A stretch of 64,000 bases of DNA. It comes from Diadema antillarum (lineage: Eukaryota). Numbering within the stretch: the first letter of the stretch is position 1; the number at the start of each line of letters is the position of its first letter. Both the position numbers and the translations under genes were made by a program. Of the stretch, positions 2,112 through 57,185 are shown in pieces. The stretch spans positions 1 through 64,000 of the forward strand of contig NW_027272988.1 in assembly GCF_040938485.1 (NCBI RefSeq), given 5' to 3'. The notes beneath the pieces are model-generated. The model ran no database searches. It had not been told where the DNA came from and was given only the letters and a program-made list of their open reading frames with translations.

Positions 2112-2670
2112 AGGGCTTTTTACACTTGTGTTTCTTAACCCCGGACTTTCTCTGACCCAGGACTATCGTTAGTCCCGTACCAATTTTTTCAGCTTTTTAC
2201 ACTCGCCAATTAGTCCCGTACTATCTCTTGTCCGGGGCTAAGGAGAAAACTTACCTTTTTACACTCGTATTTCTTAGCCCCGGACTTTCCAAACCACATG
2301 AATATTCATAATTACGATGTGTACTGTACACGTACACGCACGCATCGGCAGCACTTGATTACCTCGTTTCTGATTGGTCAGTGAGGGTCGGACTTCGTCT
2401 CCGTCGCTTAGCCCAGGATTATTTTTTCGTTCTGTTTACACTCACTTGCTTGGCACCGCAATTGCGGTGCTAACCCCTGCTATTTTGCAGGGCCAGATAG
2501 TACTGTACTATCGGTGGGGCTAGCCCACTTTGGCAAAAACGAGTGTAAACAGAAAGTGGGCTAAGGATAGTCCCGTACCAACGGTGGGGCTAAGGCCCCC
2601 CCCCCCCCCCCCCCCCTTAGCCCCACCGTTGGTCCGGGGCTAAGCAAAATTTACAAGTGTAAAAAGCCCT
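2112..2670. mobile_element. Harbinger-like MITE
   Basis: TIR agggctttttacacttgt / acaagtgtaaaaagccct; internal repeats of ttagccccgga and agtcccgtac. Confidence 0.75.
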
Positions 2671-3059
2671 TTAGTTGTGCAGGGAAATGCGTTCCTTTCA
2701 TGCGCGTTGGTGCGAGAAAAAAAAAATTTGGCTCCATGCGAGTTACGTATACCATGACCTTTGAAAAGTTTAATATCTGCGAAGACAAACTGCTATAGTT
2801 GGCTGCCTCTAGATCTCCATTCGTCTGTGTATGCACACGTTTGCTGAGTACTTCGTGTTGTGTTTACAATAACCTTTCTCTTGGGTGCGGTAACGTCATT
2901 CTGCTTGTGCATTGGCGAATTGCGATCCACGCTAGGACGGCGTGCGTCAGTGCTTGCGCGTGCAAAATGTACCTGCGTAAAATGTACACTCGCAGAGCTT
3001 AAAAGAGTTGATTACAGGTAGTAATAAAATCGATGATAATACGTTCTTAAAACCAAGAA

Positions 3060-3275
3060 AAGCCTCCCGAGTGTAAACATTCTTCTCCTAATATTGCCCT
3101 GTCACAATTTCCCGCGAGTCGCCAATTAACCATCCATTCATACACGTAGGTCGACGGGGACGTAGTGAGGGTGAAGCATCTTGTCAGACGACCAAAGGCC
3201 ATAAAGTAGGCCTACCAGACAGGATTCGAACTCCGAAACTCTACGTTAGGTGTTCACAGTCGTATCTACAGAACC
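3060..3275 (-). mobile_element. tRNA-derived SINE with conserved-core-like body
   Basis: B-box-like gagttcgaatcc on - strand followed by gacaagatgcttcaccctcac...gtgtatgaatgg, resembling metazoan SINE central domains. Confidence 0.5.
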
Positions 3276-4001
3276 ATGGCGGCACCCTTTTAAAATGGGT
3301 CACCTTTCTCACCCTGTATGATTTGGAGTCATTCATTCACCTTTTTTTTTTCTTTTTTTTGTACAGGCGCCCCCTCTTTACGGGATTCCTGGATCCGCCC
3401 CTGCTATCTGTATGGTCGATGCAAAAGCCTTTCGTCATTCTCGTCCCCTGCAACGTGACAGTCATTTTGGAGACACTCAAACTTCACTCGCTCTCAAGGT
3501 CTTTGTACAGACAATGTCTCAAAACTTTCGTTATTACTATTGTTTCGCAAACGACACGTTCGCACAAATTAGCATAATCAAGTTTAAAGGCATAGTATAC
3601 CATGTGGATGATGCATCACAATAGAATAAGCCAGTTCGGAGCTAGCTCAAGGGCATATTGATACAAATGACCTTTCTTTTTCTTTTTCTCAGTCGGTTTG
3701 AGGCACTTCACTCGTTTTCAGAGCGACATTATCATGCATAAGCTTTACGTAACAATTTATGGGATTCATCAATCCTGTTCAAACAGAGAATGAACTTGCG
3801 TAGACCAGATGACCAGAATGATCCGTCAATTAACACTTAAAAAAGCAATCATTGTTTTGCATCGAATGTATTAACAATCTCTTTTTATTGATGTTGCCAG
3901 CTGCCACTATTGCTGTCAGGTGGATGTGCTGGCAAGCAGCATTTACATGTATTTTGTATTACAATAATAATCATTACAACACAGATGCGTATCACAGTGA
4001 A

Positions 4002-34699: not shown

Positions 34700-35305
34700 A
34701 TGGCTGCGGTTGATCTTCAAGCTGTGATTCTCGATGCCATTGACTCTTTGCGAAAGCGCAAAGCTCGACCCGACTTGGAGCGAATTTGTCACATGGTGGA
34801 GCGTAAAAATGGCATTCGCAGCATGGATGTGATTCGGGAGTTGAATCAAATGGTGGACGCGGAAACCGTCATCAAAGTCGATTACAAAGGTAACACCAGC
34901 TACAGAAATGCCGCCAAATGGTGCAGAAGTCGCCTTAGTGGATCTCAGCTGAATTCTAGCGATGCCACGCGAGCTATTCTTGCTGCGATCGAGAAACTAA
35001 CGGCAAAAGACGAGTCTACTCGCTCGGGACAGGCCCAAAGTCTTCCTCAGCCTCGCAAAGCTGACCGCGCGCCTGAAGAGGGTGGAGCGACTTTGGAGGA
35101 GATCGAGAAGTTTTTCGTTGATGAGGACCCCGACACAAAATTCACCCACAGCTATCTGCAGGAGGCCATCAAACGAGAAGTCGGTGTAGGAAGTCTTCTT
35201 ATGTCTCAGAATGGCAATTACTTGCTGGCCAAATTGTCATCAAGAGATAAAATCGAGAACCACGTCCCAAAATCGAAACGAGGTCGCCCACCCTTGAAAC
35301 GAAAG
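34700..35305 (+). CDS. SAMD1: Exon 1: SAMD1-type winged helix WH1, KAT6-like WH2/H15 domain, AT-hook (KRGRPP)
   Basis: 606 nt = 202 codons from ATG to AAG|GTTGGT. The same donor position occurs in the - strand paralog. [11 protein letters not shown]...[15 protein letters not shown] resembles KAT6A WH2. Confidence 0.93.
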
Positions 35306-38300
35306 GTTGGTATGAAAAGTTGACTCTTAGCTGTGCTCTCATCTTGGGAGAGTATGTTAACTGCAAATGCGCATGCTGTGCGCGGAACTGTAGTGGTATA
35401 GCCGTCTTTAGATTTTTATTTTTTTTTTTGCACTACATTACCATTCTCATGGCATATGATGATAAAATAGTATATTTATTGCCTTTTGGGAAGGGTTCTT
35501 TGTCCTAAACTTTGCATATGAACGCGCCTCCTTGTTTGATCAACCGGAAAAGGCATAGATCTCCTCAAGATTCGCTTCTCACTATCGTCAGCAATTAAAG
35601 AAATAGATATTATCCATTTTGAATAACACATGATACATTCAGAATATCATTATAAGACAATAAAATTTAATGTGTGTCACCCGGCCCCATCTACATTTAG
35701 CCTAGGGCCTACATCTTATTGTTTCAATAGTAATTAACGAATATTGTAAAGTCTGATTTCTACCAACACGGGCTTTGCTCTCTAACATGAGGAGCAGCCA
35801 CATCTGTACGTATTATGTCAACATTATTTCTCTTGCCCTTTCGTTGTTCGTATGACGTCACAATTTGTGAAGGGAGACACGATGTGAGCTTCCCGAATGA
35901 GATGAAGGAAACTATCGGGGAACAATGTGTATAGTCGAGCGTTTGGCAGTAACACGAGTTACCATTTCGGGTTTTCTCAAATCCGCATGGCGTTTGCGCT
36001 GGTGCATGGCCGGAAATAAAATGAAAGTCTATTTAGCTGATGTAAAGGTGATTGAAGATAGAGATTATTGACATTTGAATTGAACCTGAAATCCTGTCAT
36101 TTCATTTTGAACTGTTAGCGATATTTTATTGCATGTCGGTCAGCCATAACGTCCGTTGTTCCCTAATCTGCCGCGACATGAATGCGGGGTGAATCCTTGA
36201 TTCGCTATACACTTCTTGGTTGAGGTGACAACAAGGCGCGCTGCGCGGGAAGCAATGGTGCATATCAAACCATGCTAAAAGCGCTTTGCTGTTTTTTTTT
36301 TTTTCTTGTTAGGACTATACACGCTTTACACACAATGTCTCGTCTTCTCAAACTTGTGTGACTTACAACAACAACAGCAGCAAAAGTGGATTTTAGAATT
36401 CAGGTCTGCTGGATAATCAAACCAGCAAGAAAGATTAACCACAATTCGTGTTTTCACCGCAAATTGCGGACATTGCAAGAACTAAGATGGCGGTAATACT
36501 GTATTACGCACATGATATGCGCGCTCCAAACACAACTGATTGCCTAATATCATTGTGATTTAGCGATGTAAATACTGGGATCTAGTCAACTCGTTGCTGT
36601 CATTTTACCCCGACCGCCTCTCACCTTTTTTTTTAGGTTGCCAGAGTGAATGCCTATTAGAAGTTTTCTCCATGCGTCCAACCATTTTTTGCGGCCACAC
36701 GACACACCCACTCCTGCACACGCACACGCACTTCCGCGTGGTCAGGCTAGTTAAAGTGTAAGCTTGCTTCTCAAAAAGGCTTATCCTTGGTACTTGTACA
36801 CAATAAAACGGAAGTAAATGATTTAAAGGCGCATGGTGTAGGTGATATTGTTTCGTTGTGGTTGCTCTATTCTTGCGTGACGCATTAGAGACACGTAGCT
36901 GAGATATATCCCCACATTGCTATTGTGTTATAATGGACAGAAAAAAGTAAGTCGCAGGAGGATAGTATATTGTTCAATACAAGAAGAAAATTTACATTGA
37001 ATTCAATGAGTAAATACGTAGTCGCAAGTCTTGTTTGTTTGTTTGTTTGTTTGTATGTGTGTGTGTATTTTGGGAAGCAGATTCTAGAATGACGTAACAA
37101 TCAGTTATGATTTGAAACCGAGGCCTTTATCATTAACGATCGACTGTATAATTTATCAGAGCGTTTCCCGCAAACAGCAAATATTATGGAAAGAAAGATA
37201 CGAGTGACCTCGCATTTTTTTTAAATTCAGCCTCCGTGTGAAAATAAAAATGTTTTAATTAGTGATGAACGTGATGGCAAATACCACCATTAATAGACGC
37301 CGTTGATTATATTAGTTATAACGAATGAGAGTTGGTTTGAAAATAAGATAATAGTGATCATGATTGGTCAGATGATTTATGGTAATAAAACATGATTTAT
37401 GCGCTAAGTAAATACCCATGCAGCACGTGATACTAACTCTGTTGTAATAATGACGCATGCAATAAAACAGCATGCAGGCATGTAATAAACGTGTTCCACG
37501 GGAATCTGGAAACTAAAGTATGCATGTATCTATATGGTGCTTTAGAAAGTATAAAGTCCCAGGTCAATTCGCAAAAAAAAAAAACGACGCAAATGCGAGT
37601 TTTTAACGCGTAGAGGGAGCTGAAAACCTCGGTGTTAGTGGAGGAAAAAACACCAAACGAAACTAGCAAACAAAGAAACCTTGTGACCCCATATCTATTC
37701 CGTGATAGCAGATTCGTCTGCCCGCGCGCCATACACTGTAATCGATGGAGATTTGGGCCTATTTCCCTTCCGCACAGATCGAAGTTTGTCGCACATTATT
37801 ATCCCACTCCAGCCACGATCGAACACTCGGTATATGTACATACAACAATAACGCGCCTGCTTCTCTCACGAGCGAGTCGGAGCTTTTCGATGACGTCATC
37901 AACCATTACGCGCTGGCGTTCACAAATCCTAGACACGTTCTACGAGTATTTCATCTTCCCCCCCCCCCCCCCCCCTTCTCTTCTACCGAGACACGTTATG
38001 AACACAAGAGAAACGCGCACTCTATATGAATGGCGGCTTGCCCGCGCTTTCTATGATGCCAAGATATCAATGTGAAGTACTGGTATGCAAAAATCGAGAG
38101 CAAGGAAGAAAAACAAAGTCACACCGAACACCCAGTATTGCAATAATTTCGCTCAAGATTTTGTCGAGACGATTAGTATAAACCCATATCACGAGTTACT
38201 GTCGCATTCCTCAATTCAACTCACATGTTAATATTACAAGGACGGTATTTTTATACCACTTCCAGTTCCATAATAAAAAAAAGAGGATATATTGAGTGTT

Positions 38301-41300
38301 GTGCCTTTTTATAGAGCTATCTAACGCAATACGCTATTCTCTTTGCGTTTCTCCGTCTGTCGGTAGCGCCTTTCGAATAACGATGTACGTGTATCATTCG
38401 TGCTATACAGGCAAGCAAACTTATTGTGTGTATAGTTTTAACGATGAGCGAAGCCATTATGATAGAAGGCACGCAGAATGAAATGGCGTCATTGGGCCTA
38501 AACGGTCATTTCGCCCAACGATAATTCAGGGTGCGCCCGGGGATTTTATTTTGTGCTTCTCTGCGTATGGAAGAATGGTTTATAAGTAGCCTTAACATAC
38601 GAACCATTTTGTTCACGGTGAGCTTTCTTTTCTTTACTGTGCAATGACACATGCACAGGAAAACCAGTAGCAGAAATAGCTAACGAACGAAGCGAATACA
38701 AATGTAACTAAATGACCGCGTAAAAACGCCCAGAGAATGGGTTTAGAGCGTATATTTGCGAACTGTGTAAAGAGAAGGATGATTATTTCCATTCTTCCTT
38801 TCAGATGAAGTGTAAATATTTGATTTGTTGCTCCATGTTTTACAGTCATACGAAAAGATGCGGAATACTCGGCCACATGTCGCCACAAAACACACTGATT
38901 AGCAGACGATCATTCAAAGTGGTAAATTAAGCCCCGTCTTAAAGGTTTATTCTCGATTAGCAAAGACACCGTGAATGAAATTAAGTTTCACTTCAATGCA
39001 ATACTAAGTTTTGCTAAGTTATCTACGTAGCATGAAATGGAAACAACGAATATAATCATATCAGAGTTAGAGAGTAACTAATGTATATGTGCATGGAATA
39101 TCAGTGATGATCATGGTGCACATAATTTAGATTGCCAAATAGACGCAAATAGATGATCCTTATCAAAAAGATTACGTCCGATTTTATGACGGATTTTGAT
39201 AAATGCGTAGTGAGTTAGCATCCATTGCGAATGAAATCCCAAACCAGCTTTTCATTTTTTTAACCTTCGTCATGGATGATGAGAGTGAAAAGTAGGAAAG
39301 TAATATAGCAATTCTTATTATGTAAATTAGTGAGTTTCGTAACTGTATACTCCTTATTCAAAGAGCACTCGTAGTGTATGAAACTCTGTTACATTTTTTC
39401 TTGTCGCAGACCAGTTTATTTTCCCCCTACAAATTAGAAGATAAAAAGCGCTTCTGTCTAAGTCTATACGATTTTCATAATTTTACATCATGTAGTAAAT
39501 AAATTGACAACTCCATGCATAGATTTGTTGAATGTATTGTGGTCCTTTAGAAGAGAAGCCAATACTCTAAAAACCCATTAACCAATTACAGTGCATGCGA
39601 AAGCCGCGGTCACACTGGCAAAAGATAGAGATCTCAAAAATCTTCGCGATCTTTTGCCAGTGTGACCGCGGATAAAGATGATGACATAGGAGGCTTACGT
39701 GGTTAAAGCCCCCGTTCACTATGCCGTTCTCGCTACGATTTGACAATTTTCTCAGATCGGGAAGGATCGGGTAAAACCTGAGCCGATCTGGACACAGTAC
39801 GATGTAAGAACGCTCTAAGAACGCTGCAGTTACGACTACCACGTGCTTGCCACGCTCTTACTACGATGATCGGGATTGAGACATTACAGTTTCTGCCGCT
39901 GCAGTTACGCTTTAGAACGATGTAGCTATCGCTGTCAGCGCGATGTTGCCGATGTTATCCGATCGATACACGCTGTTTTACGCTCTGAACGATCTATACG
40001 ATCTTATCATGCTGTTACCCCGTCCAGAGAGCTGAAAAGTGCCCGATGTGCCCTGATGTACCCCGATTCGACTGTCGATCCTCAGTCAGTCAACTTATTA
40101 GCATGCAGAACCAAAGAAATATACTCTGGACCTCGAAGAGGCTCCTCAACTCACTGTTCTTTTGCAGCAATGCATTGTCAATCAAAGACGTGCTGATCTT
40201 TCCAAGGTTTTTTCTTGATGTCCTTGCTTTTATAGTCCGTCTTCCTCCATTTGTAGATGATTTCATATTCTTCAAAATTCTATACTATGTCCTGTTCTTT
40301 CTCCTCTGTTAGCATCTCGTGCAGTCTCTCTGACTTTCTTCGCCTTTTGGGTAGCTGCTTCACTGCTTTCTTCTCTTCTTTTTCTTCATCTCTTCTTGTT
40401 CTTCTTCGAAAATTTGATGTCCTTCTTCTTCATATTCTGCCTCGACAGGTGCAGCGACAATGTCCTCCTCCTCAACAGTTTTGCCTCTCGATCTGTGTGA
40501 TCTTCTTCTGGCAGACATTTTGGCTGTGATTTTTCTGGCGTATCGGCTGCGTCCCTTTTAGAGCGGCGAGAGAGGAGGACGTGCGTAATTGAGTCTGGGA
40601 AGGCGTAGGAACAGCGTATACTGCGGAAACAGCGTAACTAAAGCGGGAATGAAGCGTACTGAGAGCGGCGTAGGAACGGGCCTTGATTCTATATACGAGA
40701 GTAGAGAACTAGTGAGAGCGGCGTTAAAGCGGGAAGATCGTGTTTTGATCCTGAAGGGAAGAGCGGCGCAGCAGCGGGACCACGTCGGTGTGTAACTTTA
40801 CTTCCCGTCCATTGCATTACCGCTTGCTTAACAAGTTCACCTGTGTAGAATTTATGCTTTCTTTTGTTCTGCTTCCTTGAACCCCTACTCATGCATTCCA
40901 TGGCAAAGCTGTCATGCATGTCATCATCCTTTCTCATTGTGATTTGTAACTAAATTTTGAAGACATGCTTTTTAATTCCTTATCCCAATCACTGTAAAGT
41001 CTGAAACTCTGAACCGAGTGACCGATTTATAGTTTTTCAAATGTAAAAGTCATTCGGAAGTTTTAAGCAGAGACGCAAGTTTGAAATCGCACTGGCATCA
41101 CTGTTTCGTATGAGCGAAAGCGCCATCAAGGATGAAAATCAATGATCGTGTGCACAACGCATCTGAGTTTTGTTGAAGGGTAGAATATATGCGATAAGAA
41201 ATATAACCTATTATAGGGATTGTGTGCAATTTTAGAATGGGAAAAGATGATTTTCGTGATTACGCTATAAAGATAAGAACAGCTTGAAATATGAAGCTTG

Positions 41301-44300
41301 GACTTAATTTCACAACGACCGATGTCAGTCGTCTATATATCCAAACATCTTTCTGTATGCTTTTTCTTTGCGATATACAATTGACAAATAAACGAGACAG
41401 CCTTGCTGTGATGAACGATGAATAAAAAAAAAATGATACCCTAATTTGATGCCATCTGACTTGATTTGGACTTCATACGGAACTACAGTGTTAATAACAA
41501 GCTTTCGCGCTGTTGTGTAACGTAGGTGTAAGCAGAATGATAATCGTTCATTAAACATGGTTGGTGATTGTATGAAAAATAAAAGACCTCGAAAAATTTC
41601 AGAATTTTATTGTTGCGCACAGTCGATTGGGATGCCTTCTCGTCTCATGCAATCACTGTTCTGCTCTGAGAACATGGTGCTTAATTTACCTTTTTTATTC
41701 CAGAGCTCACCGATCTCGACCATCGACTGAGGATTGAACTTAACCCTCTCAGAACCAAGCAGATGTTCGCCAGTATTTCTATCCCCTGTTATAAAACCCG
41801 TGACATTATTTCTGGACTTATACCTTGTCGATTTCGTGGCGAGGTAGTGACATTTTAGCTAGATTTTTTAATGATCTTTGTTCGTGATGTTTGACCTTTG
41901 ACTACTGTCATTTCAGGCGATGTCGATTTATTTCTACCCATCTTATTACTCAGTGTACCACCAGTGAACATTCCTTGCTGAAGTTAGGGCTCGAGAACGA
42001 TATTTTTACCAAGACTGCAGTGACCTTTAACCTTGACTTATTACCTTTGACCAGTACCATGTTCATGCATTCATTTATTTATATTGAATATTTATAATCA
42101 ATATATTCTCCATGTCCGACTTACATTGTCACTGAATATTTTCTGCAGCTGATGTAACGATATGAAATTCCTTTGTTTTCCAAAAAAAAAGTACAGTGAC
42201 TTTTGAGCGTGACTTATGACCTTTCGTCCCTATTATATCATTAATTTGAATGTAAATCTATTTGTATATGGACAAGTCCAAGCTATTTTGCACCAGTAAC
42301 GCGTGGGACATCACAAGAAGATTTAGCCCTATATTGCACTGTTAAGATTGAAACTTCATATGTTGGCCTGCTTTTGATATAGCTAGTAGGTATCTTCATT
42401 CAAAACAATAGAAATAATGAGAATCACGCGTTCAGTATTTAATTTATGCAAATTTATTCTCCAGTAACGCGTGGGACCAGAAAGATTGTCCTTTTTCTTC
42501 TTTTACTTTTTATCTCAATTATTGTGAAAATACTTGGTAGACTATTTTATACAAAATCATTACAAACATCTTTTCTACAACAATAACTGTACCTGAAACA
42601 AAATATTTAAGAAAAAAAATCATGAAACTGTTTTCTCTCAAGGTCAATTATAGAAAGATATGTATAGTAACGCGTGGGACAAGTAACGCGTGGGACACTT
42701 TTGTCACTATGAATATTGTGATGTGAATTGCACATTTACTCAGAGAAACTTTAATATGTGGTACTAATTATCTAAATAGATGTATTTCTAATAAATTCTT
42801 GCAAATTTCAATGATTTAGACCCACCAGAACAATAGATATAATAAAAAATATGAAATGCCTGTGTTATCCTTTATTTTTTGACATTTGACTTTGAATGTG
42901 ACCTTGAAAATAGCATGTAATGATCTTCTGTGAATTATTTACCCAAAGTGGAACTTTTCACCAAAGTTCAAGTCAGAATTCAGAAAATTACAAAAAATCC
43001 CTCAATAATGTACACATTTCCCATAGAAGACTAAGATTCAGTACACTTCCACTGACTTGTACACAAATCGTCCCACGCGTTACTAAATTTAATTAAAAAT
43101 TGCAAGTATGAGATTTATCAGACTAACTTTTTATCTCTTGGATATGATTAGGTCCATTGTGAATTGGGTCTTTTGAAAGTTTCAAGTCAATTAAATCATT
43201 AACTTTTATGCAAATGAGAAATAATGACCTAAAAAAGTAACGCGTGGGACATGCTAATTTTGGCCCATCCCTCATTTGCATATTTAATCAGTTGAGAATC
43301 TGAAAATCACAGTCATGATAACTTGTTATTCAGACTTAATAGACTCACCATACTTATTTTCATAAAAACGTTTAAAAATTAAAAGATGTATTTTAAAATG
43401 CAGAATTTTTGAATGTCCCACGCGTTACTCTAAATTTTGATTTATGCAGATTGATTAATTCATTGCTGGTTATGCGGAAGGATTTTTACTTTTTCTTTTT
43501 GAAATTCATGTATTTTAACTTCTTAGCTTTAAAATGATTCCAAGTTTATGCAGATTGACCCATTTTGAATTTTCAGTCTTGTGTGATCAAATAGCTTGGA
43601 CTTGCCCATATAGATGACGTTACAATAAGAAAATGCAATTTTTAGCCAAACAGAGGGAATTTGTCCAAACTAATCAGTGCAGCGCACCTACTGCTATACG
43701 CCCGTATATAGCGCACGCGGAACAGGTGCACTGAATACCAAGAAAATCCAGTCAGAGCATAGAGCTACGCCATGGTCAGATGTTACCATGGCATTATGAG
43801 ATGTAGGAAGGACAGACGGTCGGACGGCCGACCCGAAAACAGAATCCGGCACCCTCAGGGTCGAAGACATATAAAAAGAAGTGAATGCCTACTATTAAGG
43901 CTGTAGGCCCAAAATGGTTGGGACAGAAATAAGAGTAGCACTTCTTTAGCACTCGTGAATATGACAAATTAAATCAAAGCTATATATAAATACGTACGGA
44001 TGAGAATACTATGAATATTCTAAATGTTTAAAAAATAATGATATTTAACCCTTTCAGAAGATATCAAAATTCGTATGTCCAAGCAATATTCTACTTTTAG
44101 ACCTGAATGGCGTATAATTTTCATTTTTCTTTTTACACCCTATAGGAAAAAGGAATATGATGAGTGAACCAGAGCTGAACAAGAATGGATTGATGATGTA
44201 TATGTTTTCATTACGTTTATCACTATCATCATCTTATCATTATACCCAGTATTTTTACCCCCACCATGATTACATGGTTATTTCAGTGTAAAGTAGGGTT

Positions 44301-47300: not shown

Positions 47301-50108
47301 AGACTTGTTTATATGTTTTAGTGTTTTAGATCAATGTCAATAAGCGTTCTACATGACCCTCTTTTTGTGAAAAGAAAAACGAGAAATAATTGATGGCGTC
47401 TATTATCGGGTGTATATGAACTCCGTGTGCCACTTTATAGACTGTTTATGCGTTTTAATGCTGCGCGTACATTCAATGTTTATCAATTTTGAAATATCTT
47501 GTCCACAGAATCAACTTTTGTACTGTGCAAGGGAGTTTTTGCTTCAGAATGGAAGCGCTGTACAGGACAGAGAGTAGCAGCCGTGCTCCTACAACTCCGA
47601 CGACGACGGAGGCGAAACAATGGAAATATGATCTCGACATTCTATGAATAAACGATGGAATATAGTATATTTGCTCTACTCTCCTATAGCGAAGGATTCT
47701 TTTTACACGTTATGTCCATACATTCTCTCTTTTCTTTTCTTTTCTTTTTTTCTTGGGGGGGGGGGTCAAATTTTTCACTAATCAATGCATTTGGTTAATT
47801 ACTTATTCATGTGTTCCACATTGTTTTTGCGGAGCAGAAGCGAGGCATCGGCGTCATATTTCGTCGTCGTTGTTGTCGTCGGCGTCATCGGCGCTGTCAA
47901 CAAAGTAGTGTGCTCTCTCTAACTTTCCACAGCTTTGACCTATGACCACCAAACTCACACCACAGCTACATAACCTAAAAATGCCGGTCATTTTCGCACA
48001 TAGGTGAAGTTGGACAAGTTCAAAGGTCAAAAGGTCAATGAATTTGCCCTGATATGCAATCTACTCACAGGTTTGTCGTGTACTCCCAATGACTTTCCAT
48101 AGATTTAAGGCATGACTACCAAACTCACACCACAGGTGCCGGTATAGATGCCAACCAGGTGTGAATATGGGTGAAGTCCAACATGGTCAAAGTTCAAAAC
48201 GACAATGAACTTTCCTTGATAAGCTATATTCACAGCATCGTGGTATTTATGTACTCTCAATAACTTCCACAGATTTGAGCTATGGCCACCGAACTCACAC
48301 CAAATTAAGATGTCGGTCAAGGCCGAATATGAGTAGATTCGATGAGTAAGTTCAAAGGTCAAATGGTCAATGGTCGGTGAACTTTAAATGGTCAGCAATA
48401 TACACATAGTGCTGTGGTCTTTTCTCAATAACTTTCCACAGCCAGAGGTAGGACTGCATAACCTAAAGATGCCGGTCTGATCAAGTTCGAATATGGGTGC
48501 ATTCCAACAAAACTAAGTTCAAAGGTCAAAATAAACAATGAACTTTACCGGATAAGCACTTTACACATAGTGTGGTGTACTTTCAATAACTTTCCACATC
48601 TTTGAGCTATGACCACCTAATTCATACCACAGGTAGGCCTACATCATCTATAGAATATCAGTGAATTCCGATAAAAGGTCAAAAGGTCACTGAACTTATA
48701 AGGACTCTACTCACAGTATTGTGGTGTACTCTCAATTTCCACATCGTTGAGCTATAACGAATGAAAAATTCACACTACAGGTACATCACCGAAAGATCAT
48801 GTTGGTCGTAAGTACGAATATTGGTGAATGATTGTCAATGATAACAAGGTCAAAGGTCAAATTGTCACTGAACTTTCCCTGATAAGCACCATCCTTTGTT
48901 GTGTGCTCATACATGGTCAGGCTCAAATATTGGTGAAGTCGGACAAGGTCAAATGTAGAAAGGTCAATGAGCTTTCATTGAAAAACACTATAGAAATGCG
49001 ATATGCAGGCGAGACATCACTTGGCGTTTGCCTTGTTAGCCAAGTTGTACAGTGAAAAGCGGATTGTGTGAAGAATCTTGGAGATATATAAAATTGTGTT
49101 TCTATAAAGGAGTAGTAAAGCAAGTGTGATGCCGTAGTTATGCAATCGTCGTAAGAGACACCGCTCAAGAAATAAAGGTCGACAGTCCTTACTTCAAACG
49201 TTACGTGATTTCCCTCAATACCTCAAGGATAGGCCTAAGTTGAATTCATTCAGCCTCTTTGAAAATAACTTCTTTGGAAGCGTGTGTATAGGTTGGATTC
49301 CTCCAGACAAAAACATTTTCCTCTCACTTCACTGTAATTCACAAAAACCATACACTTTTTCAGTGTATGAGACGATTATACTTATTGCTTATAGAGACAA
49401 AAAGTAAGTTGACAGGATCTCACCCAGGGGCCACGGAACGTTTTTCAATGTGTGGCGGTTGTGGGCGGGATGAGAACAGGGGCAAGGCTCAATGGTGCCC
49501 CCAACACACACACACCTTTTCGGTTGGGGACGGAACCTTTGGAAAGTGTGGATATTATGTTTTTTTCCGCTATTATTTTACCGAACCCCCCCCCCCCCCA
49601 AAAAAAAAAAAAAAGAATGGGGGGGGGGGGGAGGGGCGTTGAGGGCTCAACCTTCTTCACGTATAAATCGTTACCAAACAAAAACATTCTTTTCGTGTAC
49701 GCCCGGCCTGTTTTCTGTCAATCTATATCTATATATCTATTGATCTATTTATACATTTATCTGTCTATGTTTCTCTGCATTATGATATTATCATACAGCG
49801 TCTCAAAAAGACACACGGACCCGACTTCGAGCAGGAACCGCTGGTGAAAACGCCGCCGTCTGATCTAAACTGCGATTACTGCTCACTTCCCTCAAGCTGT
49901 AACAAGTCAGGAAAGAGAGAAGAACTGCTCGTCTGCAAAGATTGCGGTCTGAAAGGTGGGTGTCTTCCCTATATAGAGATTCGTTGAACAATTCAGTCAC
50001 TATTATTTATTTGTCTGCTTGGCTTCTGTTTTCCATTCCTCGGTGTGCGCTTGGTAAGACAGAAGCGCCGACATGGTAGCGGTGCATTCAGTTCAATTCC
50101 ATTTTATA

Positions 50109-50155
<47 letters not shown>

Positions 50156-50522
50156 TTGTCATTGTTACCGGTGCATTTTTTTAAATGTGAGCTCAAATTG
50201 TAGCATTTTTTTTTCATTGTAAGCAAACAAAATACATGTGTATATACCTATACTCACAATAGTTGTGATGGTAATTGATCAATATCGAAATTACAGTTCA
50301 GGTTGTGCAAATATTAGAGGACCAGTATGACCGCGAAAGGGTGCTACATAAAAGTAAGCTTGTGTGGCTGCAAGTCACAAATAATTGGCGGTTATGACAA
50401 ACAAAACAAAACAAAATAAAACAAAGCAAAACAAATGACGAAGAGAAAATTAAAAGTTTAAACCAGATCGAATAATAACATCAAATAAGGAGAATGATAT
50501 ATGGCCTATATACGGTATACAT

Positions 50523-50574
<52 letters not shown>

Positions 50575-53500
50575 CAAAGATGAACCACAATTGTGACCTT
50601 ATAGTTTTCATTTACTTTCAGAATTGGACATGGTTATTGTTTATTTACGTGCTTTGGTGTTAGCGAGAATGTTTTTGCATTAGAACTATACTGGTATTTG
50701 TATTAGCTTATCATCAACCATGTGAGTAGATGGTAACATGCAATATAGGGCCTACTCGTATGTTGCATGGTTGATATGAATAACACCAGAAACTGAGATC
50801 AAAGTATGCGCTAGCAAATTAAATAGGAATGATAGTATGTCATACTTCGAAAGCATGATACGAGTACGAATGTCATAACATCAGAAGTTTGTGTGTATAG
50901 GCTCGTGGTAGGTGAGGAATCATTATCGTGCGAGTTTTTCCTACATGCACTATGTACAATATCGGTTCCTTCGTAAAAGTGAATACACGTGGTAGACGTC
51001 GCTTTCCATAATGATAGCTACTGATAAAGCTTCCGGCAAGAATAGATGACTTAAATTTTAGACCATGTAGGCCTATGAAACCAATTTAACATTAAACAAA
51101 TATGAATTGACAAATCGGGGTTCTTGGAGAAAGATCAATTTCATGTTGGTATGGGCCCAATTTGCAAAAATGTAATGTACTTCACAAGAGTTGCAGTTTC
51201 CAATACATGTATTTACAGTTACAAACTTGTCATTAGGCGACGACCAATCAGCCAACATCATTGATATTTGTCGCCGATGATTAATGCACCCCCTTCAATA
51301 TCTACACACGTCTTTAACAAATCAGCTCCAGTTTTTCTTTTTTATAAAAATTTCCAATTTGTAATCGCAGCTTGAAGATGGACATGGCAGCTGAAGATAT
51401 AGTGTAAATCAGTGTCTCGGTACAAGATCACAGTGAATGAAGAAATTGAAAATGACACAGCAAGGCTTTCTGAAGTTTATTTCAATTTAATATTATCATA
51501 AAAACACCATGATGAAGTCATGACCTGGAAGTTAATTGAGTTCGATATGCCGCGCCTGTGTGTATTTGTATATCAATTAATGAGGATGATTAATTAAATC
51601 TCACGTAATTTTCTCTGATATTAATGTTTTAATTACCTTTCAGTTCATCCGTCGTGCATGAAGTATTCCAAGGAACTTGCCGAGCGATCACGACTATCGC
51701 CGTGGCAGTGTATCGATTGCAAGACGTGTCACGTGTGTAAAGAAGCAGGAGACGCAGTAAGAATGCAAACTCAAATTTCCATTAAATTGATACATTAATT
51801 AAATGTACAATGTCTCTTTGAATATCTAATTCTATGATGTTGCTTCCGGAATTGAAAGTGACTGTATGTAAGTATAGTAACATAAATGTTCCCTTCACAG
51901 TCTTTGATAGTTTACTTAGTTTAGTTTTACGTAGGATTATATTTCCATGAAAATATTTGTCTTAAGCATTTATGCTCTTTAGGATATGCAAAAGGATCCA
52001 ACAATATCAAAACATTTTAAAACTCCCCACAATATTCGAAAATAAGCCAAAATACGTGGCAATGCCACTATCATTAAAGTTTGAATGGCTTTCGTGAGCA
52101 GTGGTCTCATGGAATGATTTCTATAAGACTTTGTCCATGACCAAGAAAAATGGTTTCTGGTGTGTATCCATGGAAATGTGATCTGATTTTCATAACTTGC
52201 AGGAGGTGTTCGAAAAAATAGAGATGGCACGCCGGACCGCGTCATTGTTGATTTTCCAATGATATCGGAATATTCGTACCAGTGAGGTACCTTGTTCGTA
52301 TGTATCATGAAGGTGTTTACCGCCATTAATTTCACTATGGGAAAAACATCTCTCTTTATACAACAGTTGAATAATGAAGAGTTTCCCCTCAATGATGCCA
52401 TACAGCATGTGTCTTTAGCTTCCTAAAGGGTATAGATTTATCAATAATGTGAAAATAGAATATATCACATCATTACCACGTGAGGTTTTGGGGCAAACAC
52501 AGAGAAAAAAGGATATACTTACAGATCTATCTTCCCATGTGAATATAGTGGATTGATAGTGACTTAAGGATTACGGTTCGATATTCGAGGTTCGAACGCC
52601 TGAAAATTAAGTAATGTTCGTTGACTTGGGTCACAGGTCGTTTCTCGAGGTCGATAGCCTTGAAAACGAAGTAAGATTCGTTATTCCGAAGGTTTGTTCG
52701 TCCGAAAAAGAAGTTAGTTTTGTTAATCTGAACCCTACTTCACTTTCGGACTATCGAAACTTAACTAACCTTATTTCATTTTTGGATTAGCAAACCTTCA
52801 GAATGACGAGCCTGGGATTTCATTTTCGGACTAACAAATCTTCGAAATGACGCCATAAATGTTCGAATTATTGAACCCCATTTCATTTTCGGACTAACGA
52901 AGATCTTGGTATATAGGCTTACGGAAATTGTGAGATTCGGAATAACGCACCTTTGGCCTTGGGAATAACGAATATCACCCCTGACTTGAACCAAGGAGGT
53001 ACTAGGCGAGCTCACCTATACAGTACCTCCTTGCTTGAACCAGCCTTTCACGTAGAACTTAAGAGATTTGTGGTTACAACTTCTACAATGTATATCATAC
53101 TTCTTGTTTGCATGTGTACTTTTCAAGGATACTCTACTTTTCTGTGATTCCTGCGACAAGGGATACCACATGGCGTGCCATACTCCGACTGTTGAAGAGA
53201 AACCGCACGGTAAGAGAATCCAATCTATTCTTGCTTTGGATTGAACAGGAAAACTGCGGCAGACAGTCCGCGTGTAGTATACTGCCATGACAATATTCAT
53301 GAAGGCAGAAGCGGGTGGCTTGATATAATGACCTCGAAGAATTATCGAATCACAGTAATTCAGAATTTGGCCGATCATGTTTTTAGTAATTAGGGAATCG
53401 CATAGTCGTACACAAATATACGTTTTTGTACGAGTTGAGATTACGCAGTTTAATTACAACAGTCAGTGACTAATGAGAATACTGAAGAGATCGAGCTATA

Positions 53501-54567
53501 CTGTGTGTAGATTCGTATAGTTTCTATACTATGGATAACGCGCCCGGCTAAGGTGAGTGGAGCATATAACTGTAATATCACGACTCGACATGCTTTATAA
53601 GCCGTTAATTGCAACTATTAGGCCTATTCAGTGAGAAGTTACAAAACTGTAGGCCTCCATGGCATGGCATCTTATGTGGTGAATTCGTAGGAACCCGTGA
53701 GCGTTCATCCTTCGGACTTTTGTCACTTGTAGTTTGTAATCTTGGCCGTGATGGCAGCTCTGGCTGTATGACAAAATGACTACTAGTAATATATCAGCCA
53801 CGGAAGTTATTTACGCAACGATGGGTAAATGTCTCGTTTTCATCGTTTGCAGGGACTTGGGTGTGTGAGCCTTGCGCCAGCGAAGACATGGAGGTCAAAA
53901 GTACAAGTACAGGTGAGAAAACTGCCAAAGGAATTCTTGAACCATGAGCATGCTAGCATGACAAATTTCTCTCGTCTGTATCTAAGCGCACGTTGTAGTG
54001 CGCTTCTTCTTTGGTCTGTATGTTTATGTTGTGTATAATTTGCGTGAGCGAGTAATTTAGTTACGGCCTCTCCTCGTAGTGTTTTCCCCTGGGATTATTT
54101 GTGTGACATGGGCGTGATATTCTGGAGGAGCAATTAACAGATCCTCTATTCATTTTGTGATCAAATGGAAGCGATAACATTAGATGAAATCCTGTTGTAT
54201 GCAGTATTACTCTCGAAGAAGTTATAATCAAATAAATGAACCTTTACGAATAATGTGCTGTCTACAGCATCATGGTTATTGTGATCAGTTTTCATTTTAA
54301 GAACTGGAAGTTAGAAATAAGCTGAATTAATTAGTACGAAATACTGGTAATTTCTCTGATCTCAGTTTTCAATGAAATTGCATTGATTTCATTAGCTCAT
54401 TTCAGATAAATATATCTGTACGGATTCTTTATTCATTCAGTTCGACCTATGCACGCCATTTTGCAAAGTTTGTTCCAAATTTCTTATTCATGGGACCCTA
54501 AACTCTTTCGTGTTGATCATTCGATTTATGTATCGGTAGACTTAGTTAGACTTAAGTGTGTGTGTTA

Positions 54568-54598
<31 letters not shown>

Positions 54599-57185
54599 TT
54601 CTTTTATGGTTGTACTCCATTGTTCAACCAGCCACGATGAAGTATCGATATAAAATTAATTCAACTCGACTCGATTCTCGTGTTTTTAATTGCAAACGTG
54701 GAAGTAGGCTATGTGTTCCATATACTGTAGACCTTCGTGGAAATTGATTGAATTGTTGTGATTTATTGACTGAAAATAGCAGCCCAGAGGCTGAAATACA
54801 TTCAATTTACAATAAAAGCTTAAAATTTACAATGCTTCACAATTAACTACATGAATTTATACATACGTCCGTCTAAACCAACTAGCAGTGGCGGATCCAG
54901 AGGGGGGGGGGGGGGGGGGGGGGGGGCAACCGGCGCACGCCCCCCCCCCCTTTATTTTCCGTTAAAAACTCCAATCATCTCTCTATCATTTCTATTGCCA
55001 GTTTAAGGAACAGTATAATTTTTAGCGATTTAGAGGCTTTGGTTATCCTGCCAGTGAAATGAACAATGGTTTACAATGTACCCCAAAAATAGGGCTCAAA
55101 TGAAACAGCAGGTTTTTATTCTACCTTGGGAAAAACTGACAAGAAAAGATAAAAATCTACAATGATAATAATAATAAAAAAACATACATCGAACCATAGA
55201 AATGCGGTTCTATGACTTGATGGCATAAAGTATCGGTTACAGCTCGTTATTCCGAAGGTTCGTTATTCCGAAGGCTCTTCAGTCCGAAGATTCGTTATTC
55301 CGAAGGTTCGTTATTCCGAATTTCATTTTCGGATCAACAAATCTTCGGAATAACGAACCTTCGGAATAACGCCACAAATGTTCGGATTAAAGAACCTTTT
55401 TTTCATTTTCGGATTAACAAACCACTAGGTATAGGGAATTTGTGTGTTTCGGAATAACGAACTTTCGGAATAACGAACAGCACCCAAAGTATCGTGCCCT
55501 TATTTCTCATTTATGCTGCATCATGTTACAGATGGAGATGGCTCACTCGTCTCATCAGCATCGAGCACCGACGGCTCGCCTAGCTACAAACCGACCAAGG
55601 AGCACGGGGAAGACGCACTACTACAAAACAAGTAAGATGACCCGTCGAGGTTTGTTGTCTGAACACGCCGAGGGCTTGGAATTCTGTCAATGCGCGCAAA
55701 AGTCAAACAGATTTGAGTCGAGTTGCAGGGCCTCTTATTGATTTCGTCAATAAAACGTGCAATCCAATCGTGTGATTTACACTCATTATAAGTGACCTCA
55801 TCACTTTCGTACGATAGCCGTATTTACTTTTGCCTAGAATTGTTTTACAAATATAATGTTTGAGAGCTAAAGAGGGTGTAATATTTATTTCAAAAATGTG
55901 ACTGAACAGTACGGAGTGACGTCAGTTATTTCATGATGAACCTATCATGAACAGAATTCTCAGAGCATACCCTGATCAGCGAAGGTGTATTTTGAGCCTC
56001 GATATGAACTACACACTTCATTAATATCGTGATTTGATATCAACTCACTGCACCATTTACTATATCAAGATATAATTTGTCTCTCCCGTTGTTATGCAAC
56101 AGACCCAATTCAACATCGGGTCAGGTATCTCCAGACGTGGCTACACCGAACCTGTCGATGCCAGCCAACCTCCCCGAGCAGTCGGCCCAGAGCCGAACTA
56201 GCAGTCCGACCAAAGACAGCCTCTCCACACACCCGTCCACATGGTCTCTGGAGGATGTTGTCAGTTACTTCAAGCAGAGGGGTTATGTAGAGCAGGCGGC
56301 TTCATTTAAAGATCAGGTATAGAACTTTGGGATGTGGCTGGAGCATTCTTAATCATTCATTATCCGTATAGTGGTTAAGTAACATTGCAGTGCGTCGCCA
56401 GTTTGACAAACACTTGCATGACTTGTGAGTGTTTCTCAATTTTGTATGGCCAACGTCGACAAGTTGCCTTAATTAACATGAAAGTGACAACCGAAAGTGC
56501 AGCGTTGAGCATTAAGGTATTGATAGTTTCGCTGATTAAGTTTGAACCACCTCTCCAAAGTGATTATATAGAAATGTGAATAAGTTTTATAACACTTTCA
56601 GAAAAAGTTCTTTTGACATTTCATCCTTTGTAATACACCTGTCTTACAGAGACCAACGTTGTTGAGTTTTCTTATTCCCAGTGAAAGTGATATTTAAAAA
56701 CGCTTGTGTATGGAAGTACCAGTGTTATAATAATTCTTCCCGTGATTTATTGCCAGTGTTCTTTATCACAATCACTCTTCCAAGCGTTTTGATTAAGGTG
56801 TAATAAAAAAGAAGGATGCCCTAATGGTGTTTAAAAAAAAAAAAACAAACAAAAAAAAAACCCTCTTTGGGCAGTTTGCGATAACGTCATGAACCGAGTC
56901 CTGATGTGTTTAATCTTTCAGGAAATTGATGGCAATGCACTCCTGCTTCTCCGAAGATCCGATGTGCTGACAGGACTATCATTCAAGCTAGGCCCCGCCC
57001 TCAAGATATACAAACAGGTCAGCGAGTTGCAACTTCATTACGCAAAGAAGTCTGCCTTCGACACGCCCACCACGCCGTCGCCCTCGCTCAACTCTGTGGA
57101 AACGACGTCCAGTAAAAAGCGGCGCACTGATTTCAGCAACTCTGTAACCATGGCTCCTGGTCACACTGAGCTCCTCGCCAACTGA
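34700..57185 (+). CDS. SAMD1: SAMD1/atherin-like chromatin reader, 8 coding exons (34700-35305, 49799-49955, 51644-51756, 53128-53209, 53853-53912, 55532-55631, 56103-56316, 56922-57185), 531 aa: WH1 - WH2(H15-like) - AT-hook - double PHD finger - SAM
   Basis: All introns are GT-AG and phases chain correctly (0,1,0,1,1,2,0) to 1596 nt ending in TGA. WH1 [21 protein letters not shown]...[11 protein letters not shown] and [13 protein letters not shown]...[30 protein letters not shown] closely match recalled vertebrate SAMD1 motifs. Confidence 0.9.
39707..40800 (-). mobile_element. Decayed PIF/Harbinger-type element with a pseudogenised MADF/Myb-like DNA-binding ORF (about 40020-40518)
   Basis: Left end ttaa|agcccccgttcac. 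The - strand translates to acidic/basic [19 protein letters not shown]... then [40 protein letters not shown], broken by stops and frameshifts. Confidence 0.6.
41750..43878 (+). mobile_element. Helentron/HINE-like repeat split by the TIR element; a related 3' end lies at about 15290-15355
   Basis: tgacctttgac motifs, gacagacggtcggacgg microsatellite-like stretch, and a ccggcaccct(t)caggg...cata(t)aaa terminus shared with 15330-15355. Confidence 0.5.
42265..43612. mobile_element. 1.35-kb TIR element with seven AGTAACGCGTGGGAC motifs
   Basis: tatatgg(a)caagtccaagctatt / aatagcttggacttgcccatata; inserted in a tgacctttga-type repeat. Confidence 0.75.
44310..45277. mobile_element. Foldback-like element built from TTCGTTATTCCGAAGG / TTCGGAATAACGAA units; related copies at about 15540-15650, 52565-52978 and 55240-55480
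   Basis: Left arm carries the motif forward and right arm reverse-complemented, around an unrelated spacer. Confidence 0.65.
45372..45804. mobile_element. TTAAAGGGGATGGC MITE, second copy
   Basis: Same TIRs as 23804-24168. Confidence 0.85.
47823..48990 (+). repeat. Helentron/HINE-like element with an internal array of at least six 150-170-bp units
   Basis: The actttccac...tatgaccaccaaactcacaccacag...aagttcaaaggtcaaa unit recurs near 47921, 48091, 48261, 48431, 48588 and 48735; head tttttgcggagcagaagcgaggc plus (gtc)n. Confidence 0.7.
49799..49955 (+). CDS. SAMD1: Exon 2: first half of PHD1 ([52 protein letters not shown])
   Basis: catacag| acceptor, |gtgggt donor, 157 nt. Not in the ORF track in this frame; found by translation and by match to paralog exon 8854-9010. 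Confidence 0.92.
50110..50154. repeat. (TA)n microsatellite; others: (CT)n about 13090-13120, (CA)n about 50525-50570, (GT)n about 54570-54594
   Basis: Read directly. Confidence 0.95.
51644..51756 (+). CDS. SAMD1: Exon 3: PHD1/PHD2 junction ([38 protein letters not shown])
   Basis: ctttcag| and |gtaaga, 113 nt. HPSC...WQCIDCKTC is the KAT6/DPF double-PHD signature. Confidence 0.93.
53128..53209 (+). CDS. SAMD1: Exon 4: PHD2 ([27 protein letters not shown])
   Basis: tttcaag| and |gtaaga, 82 nt, [10 protein letters not shown] motif. Confidence 0.93.
53853..53912 (+). CDS. SAMD1: Exon 5: end of PHD2 ([20 protein letters not shown])
   Basis: tttgcag| and |gtgaga, 60 nt, WxCxxC. Confidence 0.9.
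55532..55631 (+). CDS. SAMD1: Exon 6: Ser-rich linker ([34 protein letters not shown])
   Basis: gttacag| and |gtaaga, 100 nt. Supplies the phase 1 to phase 2 switch needed between exons 5 and 7; no domain signature. Confidence 0.75.
56103..56316 (+). CDS. SAMD1: Exon 7: linker and first half of SAM domain
   Basis: caacag| and |gtatag; [29 protein letters not shown]. Confidence 0.9.
56922..57185 (+). CDS. SAMD1: Exon 8: second half of SAM domain, C-terminal tail, stop
   Basis: ctttcag|GAAATTGAT; [37 protein letters not shown]; TGA ends at 57185. Confidence 0.92.

What the first reader, a model, noticed from the sequence alone, without database searches (positions are those of the whole stretch)
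34700..57185. SAMD1 orthologue with the full KAT6 targeting module: WH1-WH2-AT-hook-DPF fused to a SAM domain, no acetyltransferase
Seen: the spliced 531-aa protein has a SAMD1-type WH1 and SAMD1-type SAM, with an H15-like WH2 and a double PHD finger between them and no MYST domain. Established: vertebrate SAMD1 is WH plus SAM and acts as a repressor at unmethylated CpG islands; KAT6A/B are WH1-WH2-DPF-MYST activators recruited to the same islands, and their DPF reads acylated H3K14. Inference: this looks like the ancestral form linking the two families, a SAM-polymerising reader using the same DNA and histone address as KAT6, which could compete with it. Vertebrate SAMD1 would then have lost WH2 and DPF.
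Basis: partly seen in the sequence, partly recalled or inferred. Interest (0 to 1): 0.85.

Follow-up and report, generated by a model that had tools for sequence, protein, structure and literature searches.

The report
Sea-urchin SAMD1 orthologue carrying double PHD finger
This is a real sea-urchin gene for a chromatin-binding protein that is the invertebrate counterpart of vertebrate SAMD1 but still carries a histone-reading double PHD finger; databases hold it in many animals under the wrong name "KAT6-like", and the papers I could search do not describe it.

Summary
Eight GT-AG exons between 34700 and 57185 (+) splice into a 531-aa protein. It is letter-for-letter the RefSeq model "histone acetyltransferase KAT6A-like [Diadema antillarum]".

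The domain order is WH1, H15-like WH2, AT-hook, double PHD finger (DPF), SAM. No MYST domain occurs anywhere in the window.

WH1 and SAM are clearly SAMD1-type. In trees, vertebrate SAMD1 nests among the deuterostome members of this family and apart from true KAT6. So the orthology call is supported.

Three parts of the interpretation need correction:
- Vertebrate SAMD1 did not lose WH2. Its "small helical domain" is the WH2 homologue (hhalign 98%). Only the DPF and the AT-hook are gone.
- The AT-hook is not a KAT6 feature (1 of 119 KAT6 proteins).
- The DPF is as close to DPF2/DPF3 as to KAT6, and KAT6 is the older family. The protein is therefore better read as the ancestral SAMD1 form than as an ancestor of both families.

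The architecture is already catalogued: at least 136 proteins across Bilateria, some named atherin or SAMD1. Published papers nevertheless call SAMD1 vertebrate-specific. Drosophila Lint-O (two PHD fingers plus SAM, an L(3)mbt co-repressor) is probably the fly member; I could not test this.

No RNA run was listed, so the junctions are unconfirmed in this species. The scan had not found this on other DNA.

The parts
34700..35305 (+). Coding exon 1 (aa 1-202). It holds WH1 (about aa 6-78), WH2 (about aa 82-185, with a loop inserted at 110-130) and the AT-hook-like KRGRP motif (aa 193-197).
   Evidence: Pfam SAMD1_WH E 2.4e-28. Splice model. Model secondary structure and pLDDT. WH2 profile match to KAT6 WH2. 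AT-hook column conservation.
49799..49955 (+). Coding exon 2 (aa 203-254 plus 1 nt). Basic linker and first half of PHD1 (C227, C230, C248, C251).
51644..51756 (+). Coding exon 3 (aa 255-292). Second half of PHD1 (H256, C259, W275, C277, C280) and start of PHD2 (C283, C286).
53128..53209 (+). Coding exon 4 (aa 293-319). Core of PHD2 (C298, C301, H306, C309).
   Evidence: Pfam PHD E 5.9e-7 on the exon alone..
53853..53912 (+). Coding exon 5 (aa 320-339). End of PHD2 (W322, C324, C327).
55532..55631 (+). Coding exon 6 (aa 340-372). Ser/Thr-rich disordered linker.
   Evidence: pLDDT below 50 over residues 342-406.
56103..56316 (+). Coding exon 7 (aa 373-444). Linker and first half of the SAM domain.
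56922..57185 (+). Coding exon 8 (aa 445-531 plus stop). Second half of the SAM domain, including L453, L467 and L471, then a disordered tail.

Best explanation
The interval holds an intact 8-exon gene of the sea urchin Diadema antillarum. It encodes the invertebrate orthologue of SAMD1 (atherin): WH1, WH2, AT-hook, double PHD finger and SAM, with no catalytic domain. NCBI's name 'KAT6A-like' is a misnomer caused by the shared N-terminal module.

Shown: the gene model, the domain identities, the orthology with vertebrate SAMD1, and the conservation of the residues that in human SAMD1 contact CpG DNA and form the SAM interfaces.

Inferred mechanism: WH1 reads unmethylated CpG-containing DNA. WH2 and the AT-hook add nucleosome or linker-DNA contacts. 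The DPF reads the H3 tail, probably acylated K14. The SAM domain self-associates and binds the SAM domain of an L(3)mbt/L3MBTL-type protein. The protein would then be a multivalent, non-enzymatic scaffold that brings a repressor to unmethylated, acetylated promoters, as SAMD1 does with L3MBTL3 and as Drosophila Lint-O does with L(3)mbt.

Vertebrates later lost the DPF and AT-hook and kept a reduced WH2, the SHD.

I put identity and orthology at about 0.9 and the repressor-scaffold mechanism at about 0.5.
For: - Gene model: a unique GT-AG model equals the RefSeq protein.
- Domains: Pfam on the full protein and four confident domains in the model.
- WH1: SAMD1 6lui at 69.8 bits, Z 14.4, rmsd 0.9 A and 52 % identity, against KAT6A WH1 at 37.9 bits and 33 % identity.
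- SAM: SAMD1 6luk at 76.4 bits and 56 % identity, against PHC3 at 46 bits and L3MBTL3 at 44 bits.
- WH1 tree: KAT6 is split from (family + SAMD1) at 98/94*. Vertebrate SAMD1 (100/96*) lies inside a deuterostome clade at 95/80*.
- WH1+SAM tree: (deuterostome members + SAMD1) is split from protostome members at 93/93.
- True KAT6 with MYST coexists with this family in Owenia, Mya, Mercenaria, Limulus and Centruroides and in the genus Branchiostoma.
- DNA contacts: 8 of the 9 human SAMD1 DNA-contact residues (listed in PMC8115922) are kept and nearly invariant in 110 members: R18, R20, K21, R23, Y62, K63, S67, R69.
- SAM interfaces: L453, L467 and L471 correspond to human L495 (mid-loop surface) and L509/L513 (end-helix surface), as defined in PMC11969672.
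- DPF: all 16 zinc ligands are present. The acyl-K14 pocket residues of MOZ (PMC3902925) are mostly kept: Y229, M260, W275, C277, I278.
- Co-transcription in a relative: a 1917-nt contig carries one uninterrupted WH-PHD-SAM ORF.
- Function in a fly protein of like build: Lint-O needs its SAM domain to bind L(3)mbt and repress targets (PMC9535798).
Against: - No RNA evidence from this species: no run was listed.
- Every functional step is inferred from residue conservation and from relatives.
- One DNA-contact position differs: human R56 is His here and in most family members.
- Two acyl-pocket positions differ from MOZ: S210 is Asp and N235 is Leu.
- In Lint-O, mutating eight PHD cysteines did not abolish repression (PMC9535798). 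The role of the DPF is therefore uncertain even in the one studied relative, and the orthology of Lint-O was not tested here.
- This + copy has the longer DPF branch of the two Diadema sequences (0.19 against 0.015). It may be the more derived paralogue.
Confidence: 0.75

Rival explanations
1. It is what NCBI calls it: a KAT6 paralogue that lost its MYST domain and picked up an unrelated SAM domain. The resemblance to SAMD1 would then be superficial.
For: The WH1-WH2-DPF order is the same as in KAT6, and the WH2 domains are homologous. The best PDB hit for the whole protein is the KAT6A DPF.
Against: - WH1 groups with SAMD1 and is split from all 16 KAT6 sequences at 98/94*.
- The SAM domain scores 76 bits to SAMD1 against at most 46 bits to any other SAM.
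- Vertebrate SAMD1 nests within the deuterostome members.
- Vertebrate SAMD1 retains the WH2 homologue.
Confidence: 0.04
2. The 531-aa protein is a gene-model chimera. A WH-DPF gene and a separate SAM gene were merged by the predictor and by the first reader.
For: No RNA run for this species could be listed. Exon 6 and the linker are poorly conserved and disordered.
Against: - At least 136 proteins from many phyla share WH1, DPF and SAM in this order.
- Several sit on contigs of 1.5-3 kb, too short to hold introns of the size seen here.
- One such contig was inspected and has a single uninterrupted ORF.
- All splice sites are canonical and in phase.
- There is no stop and no alternative start between the PHD and SAM exons in the model.
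Confidence: 0.04
3. The identity is the same but the function is the opposite or different. The protein would be a positive reader that stabilises acetylated, unmethylated promoters (like BAF45/DPF subunits) or a structural chromatin protein. It would not be an L3MBTL-linked repressor or a competitor of KAT6.
For: - The DPF is as close to DPF2/DPF3, which are subunits of an activating remodeller, as it is to KAT6.
- It has the Asp that DPF2 carries at MOZ S210, as shown by the 5b78 S210D/N235R mutant.
- Nothing here measures repression.
Against: - The two studied proteins of like build, SAMD1 and Lint-O, are both repressors that work through SAM-SAM contact with L3MBTL3 or L(3)mbt (PMC8115922, PMC9535798).
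- The interface leucines are conserved.
- No Requiem (2/3) domain or C2H2 domain of the d4 family was found by Pfam.
Confidence: 0.15

Closest known systems
Vertebrate SAMD1 (atherin)
   Same: N-terminal CpG-type winged helix with 52 % identity and rmsd 0.9 A to 6lui. A WH2-derived helical domain (SHD). A C-terminal SAM domain with 56 % identity to 6luk and the same interface leucines. The phylogeny is that of an orthologue.
   Different: The sea-urchin protein has a complete double PHD finger and an AT-hook between WH2 and SAM. Vertebrate SAMD1 has only a disordered region there, which is Pro/Ala-rich in mammals. WH2 is a full three-helix winged helix here.
KAT6A/KAT6B/Enok (MOZ/MORF)
   Same: Collinear WH1-WH2-DPF module. 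WH2 is homologous at 95.8 % hhalign probability. The DPF is 44-47 % identical with Z about 15.
   Different: No MYST acetyltransferase domain. WH1 lies in a separate, well-supported clade. A SAM domain is at the C-terminus. An AT-hook is present here but is almost never present in KAT6.
Drosophila Lint-O (CG2662)
   Same: Described as two PHD fingers plus a C-terminal SAM domain. It is a nuclear co-repressor that binds L(3)mbt through SAM-SAM contact (PMC9535798). That matches the DPF-SAM half of this protein and the SAMD1-L3MBTL3 relationship.
   Different: No winged helix is reported for Lint-O. Its sequence could not be fetched, so orthology is a lead and not a result. The authors proposed SAMD13, not SAMD1, as the human counterpart.
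d4 family (DPF1-3 / BAF45) double PHD fingers
   Same: The DPF is 43 % identical with Z 14.5-15.9. It has the Asp that DPF2 carries at MOZ S210 (5b78 is the MOZ S210D/N235R mutant).
   Different: No N-terminal 2/3 (Requiem) domain and no C2H2 finger. WH domains and a SAM domain are present instead.

Membership tests
SAMD1 (atherin) family | N-terminal SAMD1-type winged helix that groups with SAMD1 rather than with KAT6 or ZMYND11 | tested here: met
   Pfam PF21524 at 95.7 bits. 6lui scores 69.8 bits against 37.9 for KAT6A. Tree split at 98/94*, with SAMD1 nested in the family. ZMYND11 is only 19 % identical.
SAMD1 (atherin) family | C-terminal SAM domain of the SAMD1 type | tested here: met
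   6luk scores 76.4 bits against at most 46 for PHC3, L3MBTL3, Ph, Scm and Sfmbt. Z 13.7, rmsd 0.6 A, 56 % identity.
SAMD1 (atherin) family | Residues that contact CpG DNA in 6LUI (R43, R45, K46, R48, R56, Y87, K88, S92, R94) | tested here: met
   8 of 9 are identical in an ungapped alignment. R56 is His (residue list from PMC8115922).
SAMD1 (atherin) family | Small helical domain (PF24971) between WH and SAM | tested here: met
   It is present as a full WH2. The vertebrate SHD region against the family WH2 profile gives 98.2 % probability and E 2.8e-14. PF24971 hits orthologues at 19-26 bits, below its 27-bit cut-off. It gives no hit in the Diadema protein itself.
SAMD1 (atherin) family | Architecture limited to WH, disordered region and SAM, as described for vertebrates | tested here: not met
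   A complete DPF (aa 222-335) and an AT-hook lie between WH2 and SAM.
SAMD1 (atherin) family | Binding to unmethylated GCGC DNA, SAM polymerisation and binding to L3MBTL3 | not testable with these tools
   Only the conservation of the contact residues and of L453/L467/L471 could be checked.
KAT6 (MOZ/MORF/Enok) | MYST acetyltransferase domain (PF01853/PF17772) | tested here: not met
   No Pfam hit in P0156. No tblastn match to the MYST part of four KAT6 proteins anywhere in the window.
KAT6 (MOZ/MORF/Enok) | N-terminal WH1-WH2-DPF module | tested here: met
   Same order. WH2 is homologous. DPF Z about 15. However, WH1 and DPF each form a clade separate from KAT6.
d4 / DPF1-3 | N-terminal 2/3 (Requiem) domain and C2H2 finger ahead of the DPF | tested here: not met
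   Pfam finds neither.
Lint-O (CG2662) type L(3)mbt co-repressors | Two PHD fingers plus a SAM domain, with SAM-dependent binding to L(3)mbt | not tested
   The domain content agrees with the published description (PMC9535798).

The most novel reading that the evidence does not exclude
The invertebrate SAMD1 is a built-in antagonist of KAT6. It uses a homologous WH1-WH2-DPF address to sit on the same unmethylated, H3K14-acylated promoters. There it polymerises through its SAM domain and recruits an L(3)mbt/KDM1A-type repressor, giving negative feedback on promoter acetylation. Lint-O/L(3)mbt in flies and SAMD1/L3MBTL3 in vertebrates would then be two reduced versions of one ancient bilaterian pathway.
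Probability: 0.2. Interest if true: 0.7.

Novelty: new member of a known kind. Interest (0 to 1): 0.42.

Why it matters
Three published statements would need revising:
- that SAMD1 is vertebrate-specific (PMC8115922);
- that double PHD fingers occur in only six proteins (PMC8538644);
- that the human counterpart of the fly L(3)mbt co-repressor Lint-O is unclear (PMC9535798).

The family described here offers one frame for all three. A bilaterian WH1-WH2-DPF-SAM reader lost its DPF in vertebrates and was probably further reduced in flies.

It also flags a systematic mis-annotation. Dozens of 450-750-aa proteins without a MYST domain are named 'histone acetyltransferase KAT6A/B-like'.

Finally, it identifies the unexplained 'small helical domain' of human SAMD1 as a degenerate linker-histone-like winged helix. 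That suggests a nucleosome-contact function which can be tested.

The gene itself is an ordinary, already-predicted member of this family.

Tried and rejected
- **Pfam exon by exon.** This missed the SAM domain and most of the DPF because both are split across exons. Finding the stored full-length protein P0156 solved it.
- **WH2 folded alone (aa 115-200).** This construct lacked helix 1 and gave only weak Foldseek E-values of 0.13-0.5. Linker histones and a MORF WH domain (8e4v) were still among the top hits. The full-length model showed the missing helix at aa 87-109.
- **Fetching KAT6 through a long flatworm family member.** This returned mostly flatworm relatives. A sponge KAT6 from that list then retrieved the KAT6 family.
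- **d4/DPF1-3, PHF10 (other than fly SAYP), PHC/SCM/L3MBTL SAM and Lint-O sequences.** None could be obtained as stored proteins. The DPF tree therefore has no d4 branch, and the SAM comparison rests on PDB scores.
- **Atlas searches.** They named no Lint-O cluster.
- **Rejected ideas.** A MYST exon elsewhere in the window. A chimeric gene model.
Full report
**What is in the sequence.** The window is animal DNA with long introns. Exon-sized ORFs between 34700 and 57185 on the + strand carry a SAMD1-type winged helix (Pfam E 2.4e-28 on exon 1 alone) and PHD-like and SAM-like pieces. A library search with exon 1 found 386 relatives, many of 450-650 aa with the same N-terminus. One protein returned by a follow-up search is P0156, 531 aa, named by NCBI 'histone acetyltransferase KAT6A-like [Diadema antillarum]'. 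It is 100 % identical to the window's exons. So the window comes from this long-spined sea urchin.

**Gene model.** I enumerated splice sites around each match. Exactly one chain translates to P0156. It has eight coding exons: 34700-35305, 49799-49955, 51644-51756, 53128-53209, 53853-53912, 55532-55631, 56103-56316 and 56922-57185. All have AG/GT boundaries and pyrimidine tracts.

**Domains.** Pfam on the whole protein gives SAMD1_WH (95.7 bits), two PHD fingers (60.9 bits) and SAM_2 (22.9 bits, above its cut-off), and no MYST domain. Four KAT6 proteins used as tblastn queries match the window only in their WH and PHD parts, never in the acetyltransferase part. An AlphaFold model built on 110 family members has four confident domains separated by disordered linkers:
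- WH1, aa 1-78
- WH2, aa 82-185, with a low-confidence loop at 110-130
- DPF, aa 222-335
- SAM, aa 410-490

Structural alignment to solved chains gave these matches:

| Domain | Best matches | Weaker matches |
|---|---|---|
| WH1 | SAMD1 WH 6lui: Z 14.4, rmsd 0.9 A, 52 % identity | KAT6A WH1: Z 13.1, 33 %; ZMYND11: 19 % |
| SAM | SAMD1 SAM 6luk: Z 13.7, rmsd 0.6 A, 56 % identity | PHC3, L3MBTL3: 35-38 % |
| DPF | DPF3 (Z 15.9), MORF (15.2), MOZ (15.1), DPF2 (14.5), all 43-47 % identity | - |

Sequence scores against the PDB tell the same story. WH1 and SAM are unambiguously SAMD1-type. The DPF does not discriminate between KAT6 and the d4 family.

**WH2.** This is the weakest domain by sequence in this species, with no Pfam hit. 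Several lines support it:
- The family's WH2 profile aligns to the KAT6 WH2 profile with 95.8 % probability, E 8e-9.
- Orthologues reach the Linker_histone cut-off: Lingula at 24.4 bits and Glandiceps at 25.0 bits.
- The profile weakly finds HP1BP3, H1.0 and a MORF WH domain (8e4v) in the PDB.
- A model of aa 115-200 has linker histones H5 and H1.0 and the same MORF WH domain among its top fold matches, at weak E-values.
- The full model shows the three helices and the hairpin of a winged helix, with the first helix at aa 87-109.

**Orthology.** In a WH1 tree of 56 sequences, the 16 true KAT6 proteins are split from everything else at 98/94*. They come from sponges, a ctenophore, a placozoan, amphioxus, molluscs, chelicerates and vertebrates. 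The five vertebrate SAMD1 sequences (100/96*) sit inside a starred clade with the hemichordate, amphioxus and echinoderm members of this family. A concatenated WH1+SAM tree splits (deuterostome members + vertebrate SAMD1) from protostome members at 93/93. That is the species tree, which is what orthology predicts. The family coexists with a separate MYST-bearing KAT6 in Owenia, Mya, Mercenaria, Limulus and Centruroides and in the genus Branchiostoma. It is therefore not a truncated KAT6.

**What vertebrates lost.** The fish and shark SAMD1 proteins have no DPF, so DPF loss is supported. WH2 was not lost:
- A jackhmmer search started from the Diadema WH2 reaches shark SAMD1 at E 1.5e-12.
- The region it hits is Pfam's 'SAMD1 small helical domain' (85.6 bits in P0132).
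- The SHD regions of three vertebrate-type proteins (shark P0082 and the unnamed P0132 and P0144) align to the family WH2 profile at 98.2 %, E 2.8e-14, and to KAT6 WH2 at 89.6 %.
- The Atlas cluster 'Atherin' of chordates carries the SHD in 97 % of members.

Some teleost copies do lack it. The AT-hook core [KR]GRP lies between WH2 and DPF in 81 of 136 family members, in 1 of 119 KAT6 proteins and in none of 5 vertebrate SAMD1. It is a family feature and not part of a KAT6 module.

**Direction of evolution.** KAT6 with WH1, WH2 and DPF is present in non-bilaterians. Every named member of this family that I saw is bilaterian. The groups are echinoderms, hemichordates, amphioxus, molluscs, an annelid, a brachiopod, nemerteans, flatworms, chelicerates, myriapods, a tardigrade and many insect orders. 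The lists were capped, so absence elsewhere is not shown. The simplest reading is that a KAT6-like N-terminus was duplicated and joined to a Polycomb-type SAM domain before the bilaterian radiation. This protein preserves the ancestral SAMD1 form. It is not a form ancestral to both families. The family's DPFs are one clade (98/100*) distinct from KAT6 DPFs. I could not obtain d4 sequences to place them.

**Mechanism (inferred).**
- The ungapped alignment to 6lui places R18, R20, K21, R23, Y62, K63, S67 and R69 at the positions of human R43, R45, K46, R48, Y87, K88, S92 and R94. [quoted passage not shown] They are nearly invariant in 110 members. Only R56 is replaced, by His.
- All 16 zinc ligands of the DPF are present.
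- Of the MOZ H3K14ac pocket (S210, F211, N235, L242, W257, C259, I260; PMC3902925), the hydrophobic core is kept as Y229, M260, W275, C277 and I278. S210 is Asp and N235 is Leu. The best sequence match is in fact the MOZ S210D/N235R mutant.
- In the SAM domain, L453, L467 and L471 correspond to human L495, L509 and L513. Mutating those abolishes self-association or L3MBTL3 binding (PMC11969672).
- Drosophila Lint-O is described as two PHD fingers plus a SAM domain. It binds L(3)mbt through the SAM domain and co-represses its targets (PMC9535798).

The most likely function is therefore a non-enzymatic, multivalent chromatin scaffold that recruits an L(3)mbt-type repressor to unmethylated promoters. 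Competition with KAT6 is possible and untested.

**Novelty.** The gene model is in RefSeq. The architecture is present in at least 136 stored proteins and in several Atlas clusters. A few members are already named atherin or SAMD1: Atta, Euwallacea, Biomphalaria and Aplysia. The papers I could search do not describe it:
- SAMD1 is called vertebrate-specific (PMC8115922).
- The KAT6 WH papers compare only KAT6, SAMD1 and ZMYND11.
- A DPF review lists six DPF proteins.
- The Lint-O paper proposes SAMD13 as the human counterpart.

The finding is a correct reading of a catalogued but undescribed and mis-named family. Its evolutionary interpretation is partly wrong in detail.

**Limits.** No RNA run could be listed. 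Transcript support comes only from a relative's 1917-nt contig with one uninterrupted WH-PHD-SAM ORF. The trees rest on short domains of 80-156 columns. Lint-O's membership and the absence of the family outside Bilateria were not tested.

Noticed in passing
window 28482-27877 (-), 9013-8810 (-), 6980-6858 (-), 5869-5786 (-), 4187-4116 (-): A head-to-head paralogue of the same gene lies on the - strand, with its start codon 6.2 kb from that of the + gene. Its exon 1 is 86.7 % identical in protein and all four PHD exons are present. The Diadema setosum protein P0154 is closer to this copy than to the + copy (96.5 % against 87.6 % in exon 1).
   Followed up: partly
window 1-4116 (-): No SAM exon of the - paralogue is detectable in the 4.1 kb left before the window edge. 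Its exon 5 keeps the same GT donor as the + gene, and its D. setosum orthologue has a SAM domain. The SAM exons may simply lie outside the window, so a 'SAM-less' reading is not established.
   Followed up: partly
window 34700-35179 (+) versus 28482-28003 (-): The first 480 nt of exon 1 (WH1 and most of WH2) are about 97 % identical in DNA between the two paralogues, silent sites included. Identity drops abruptly to about 55-65 % for the rest of the exon and is at background upstream of the ATG. This pattern fits a gene-conversion tract.
   Followed up: partly
proteins P0003, P0004, P0008-P0012 and about 80 others: 89 of the stored relatives are short proteins of 200-370 aa holding only WH1 and WH2. 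They may be single-exon fragments from short contigs or a real WH1-WH2-only form. One tick protein (P0001, 850 aa) has three tandem SAMD1_WH domains.
   Followed up: no
proteins P0236, P0243 (Centruroides and a Logan contig): These family relatives have a THAP-type domain (PF05485) ahead of the DPF and SAM in place of the winged helices. This suggests the DNA-binding head has been swapped in some chelicerates.
   Followed up: no
window 26530-26698: A run of 169 N lies inside intron 1 of the - paralogue.
   Followed up: no
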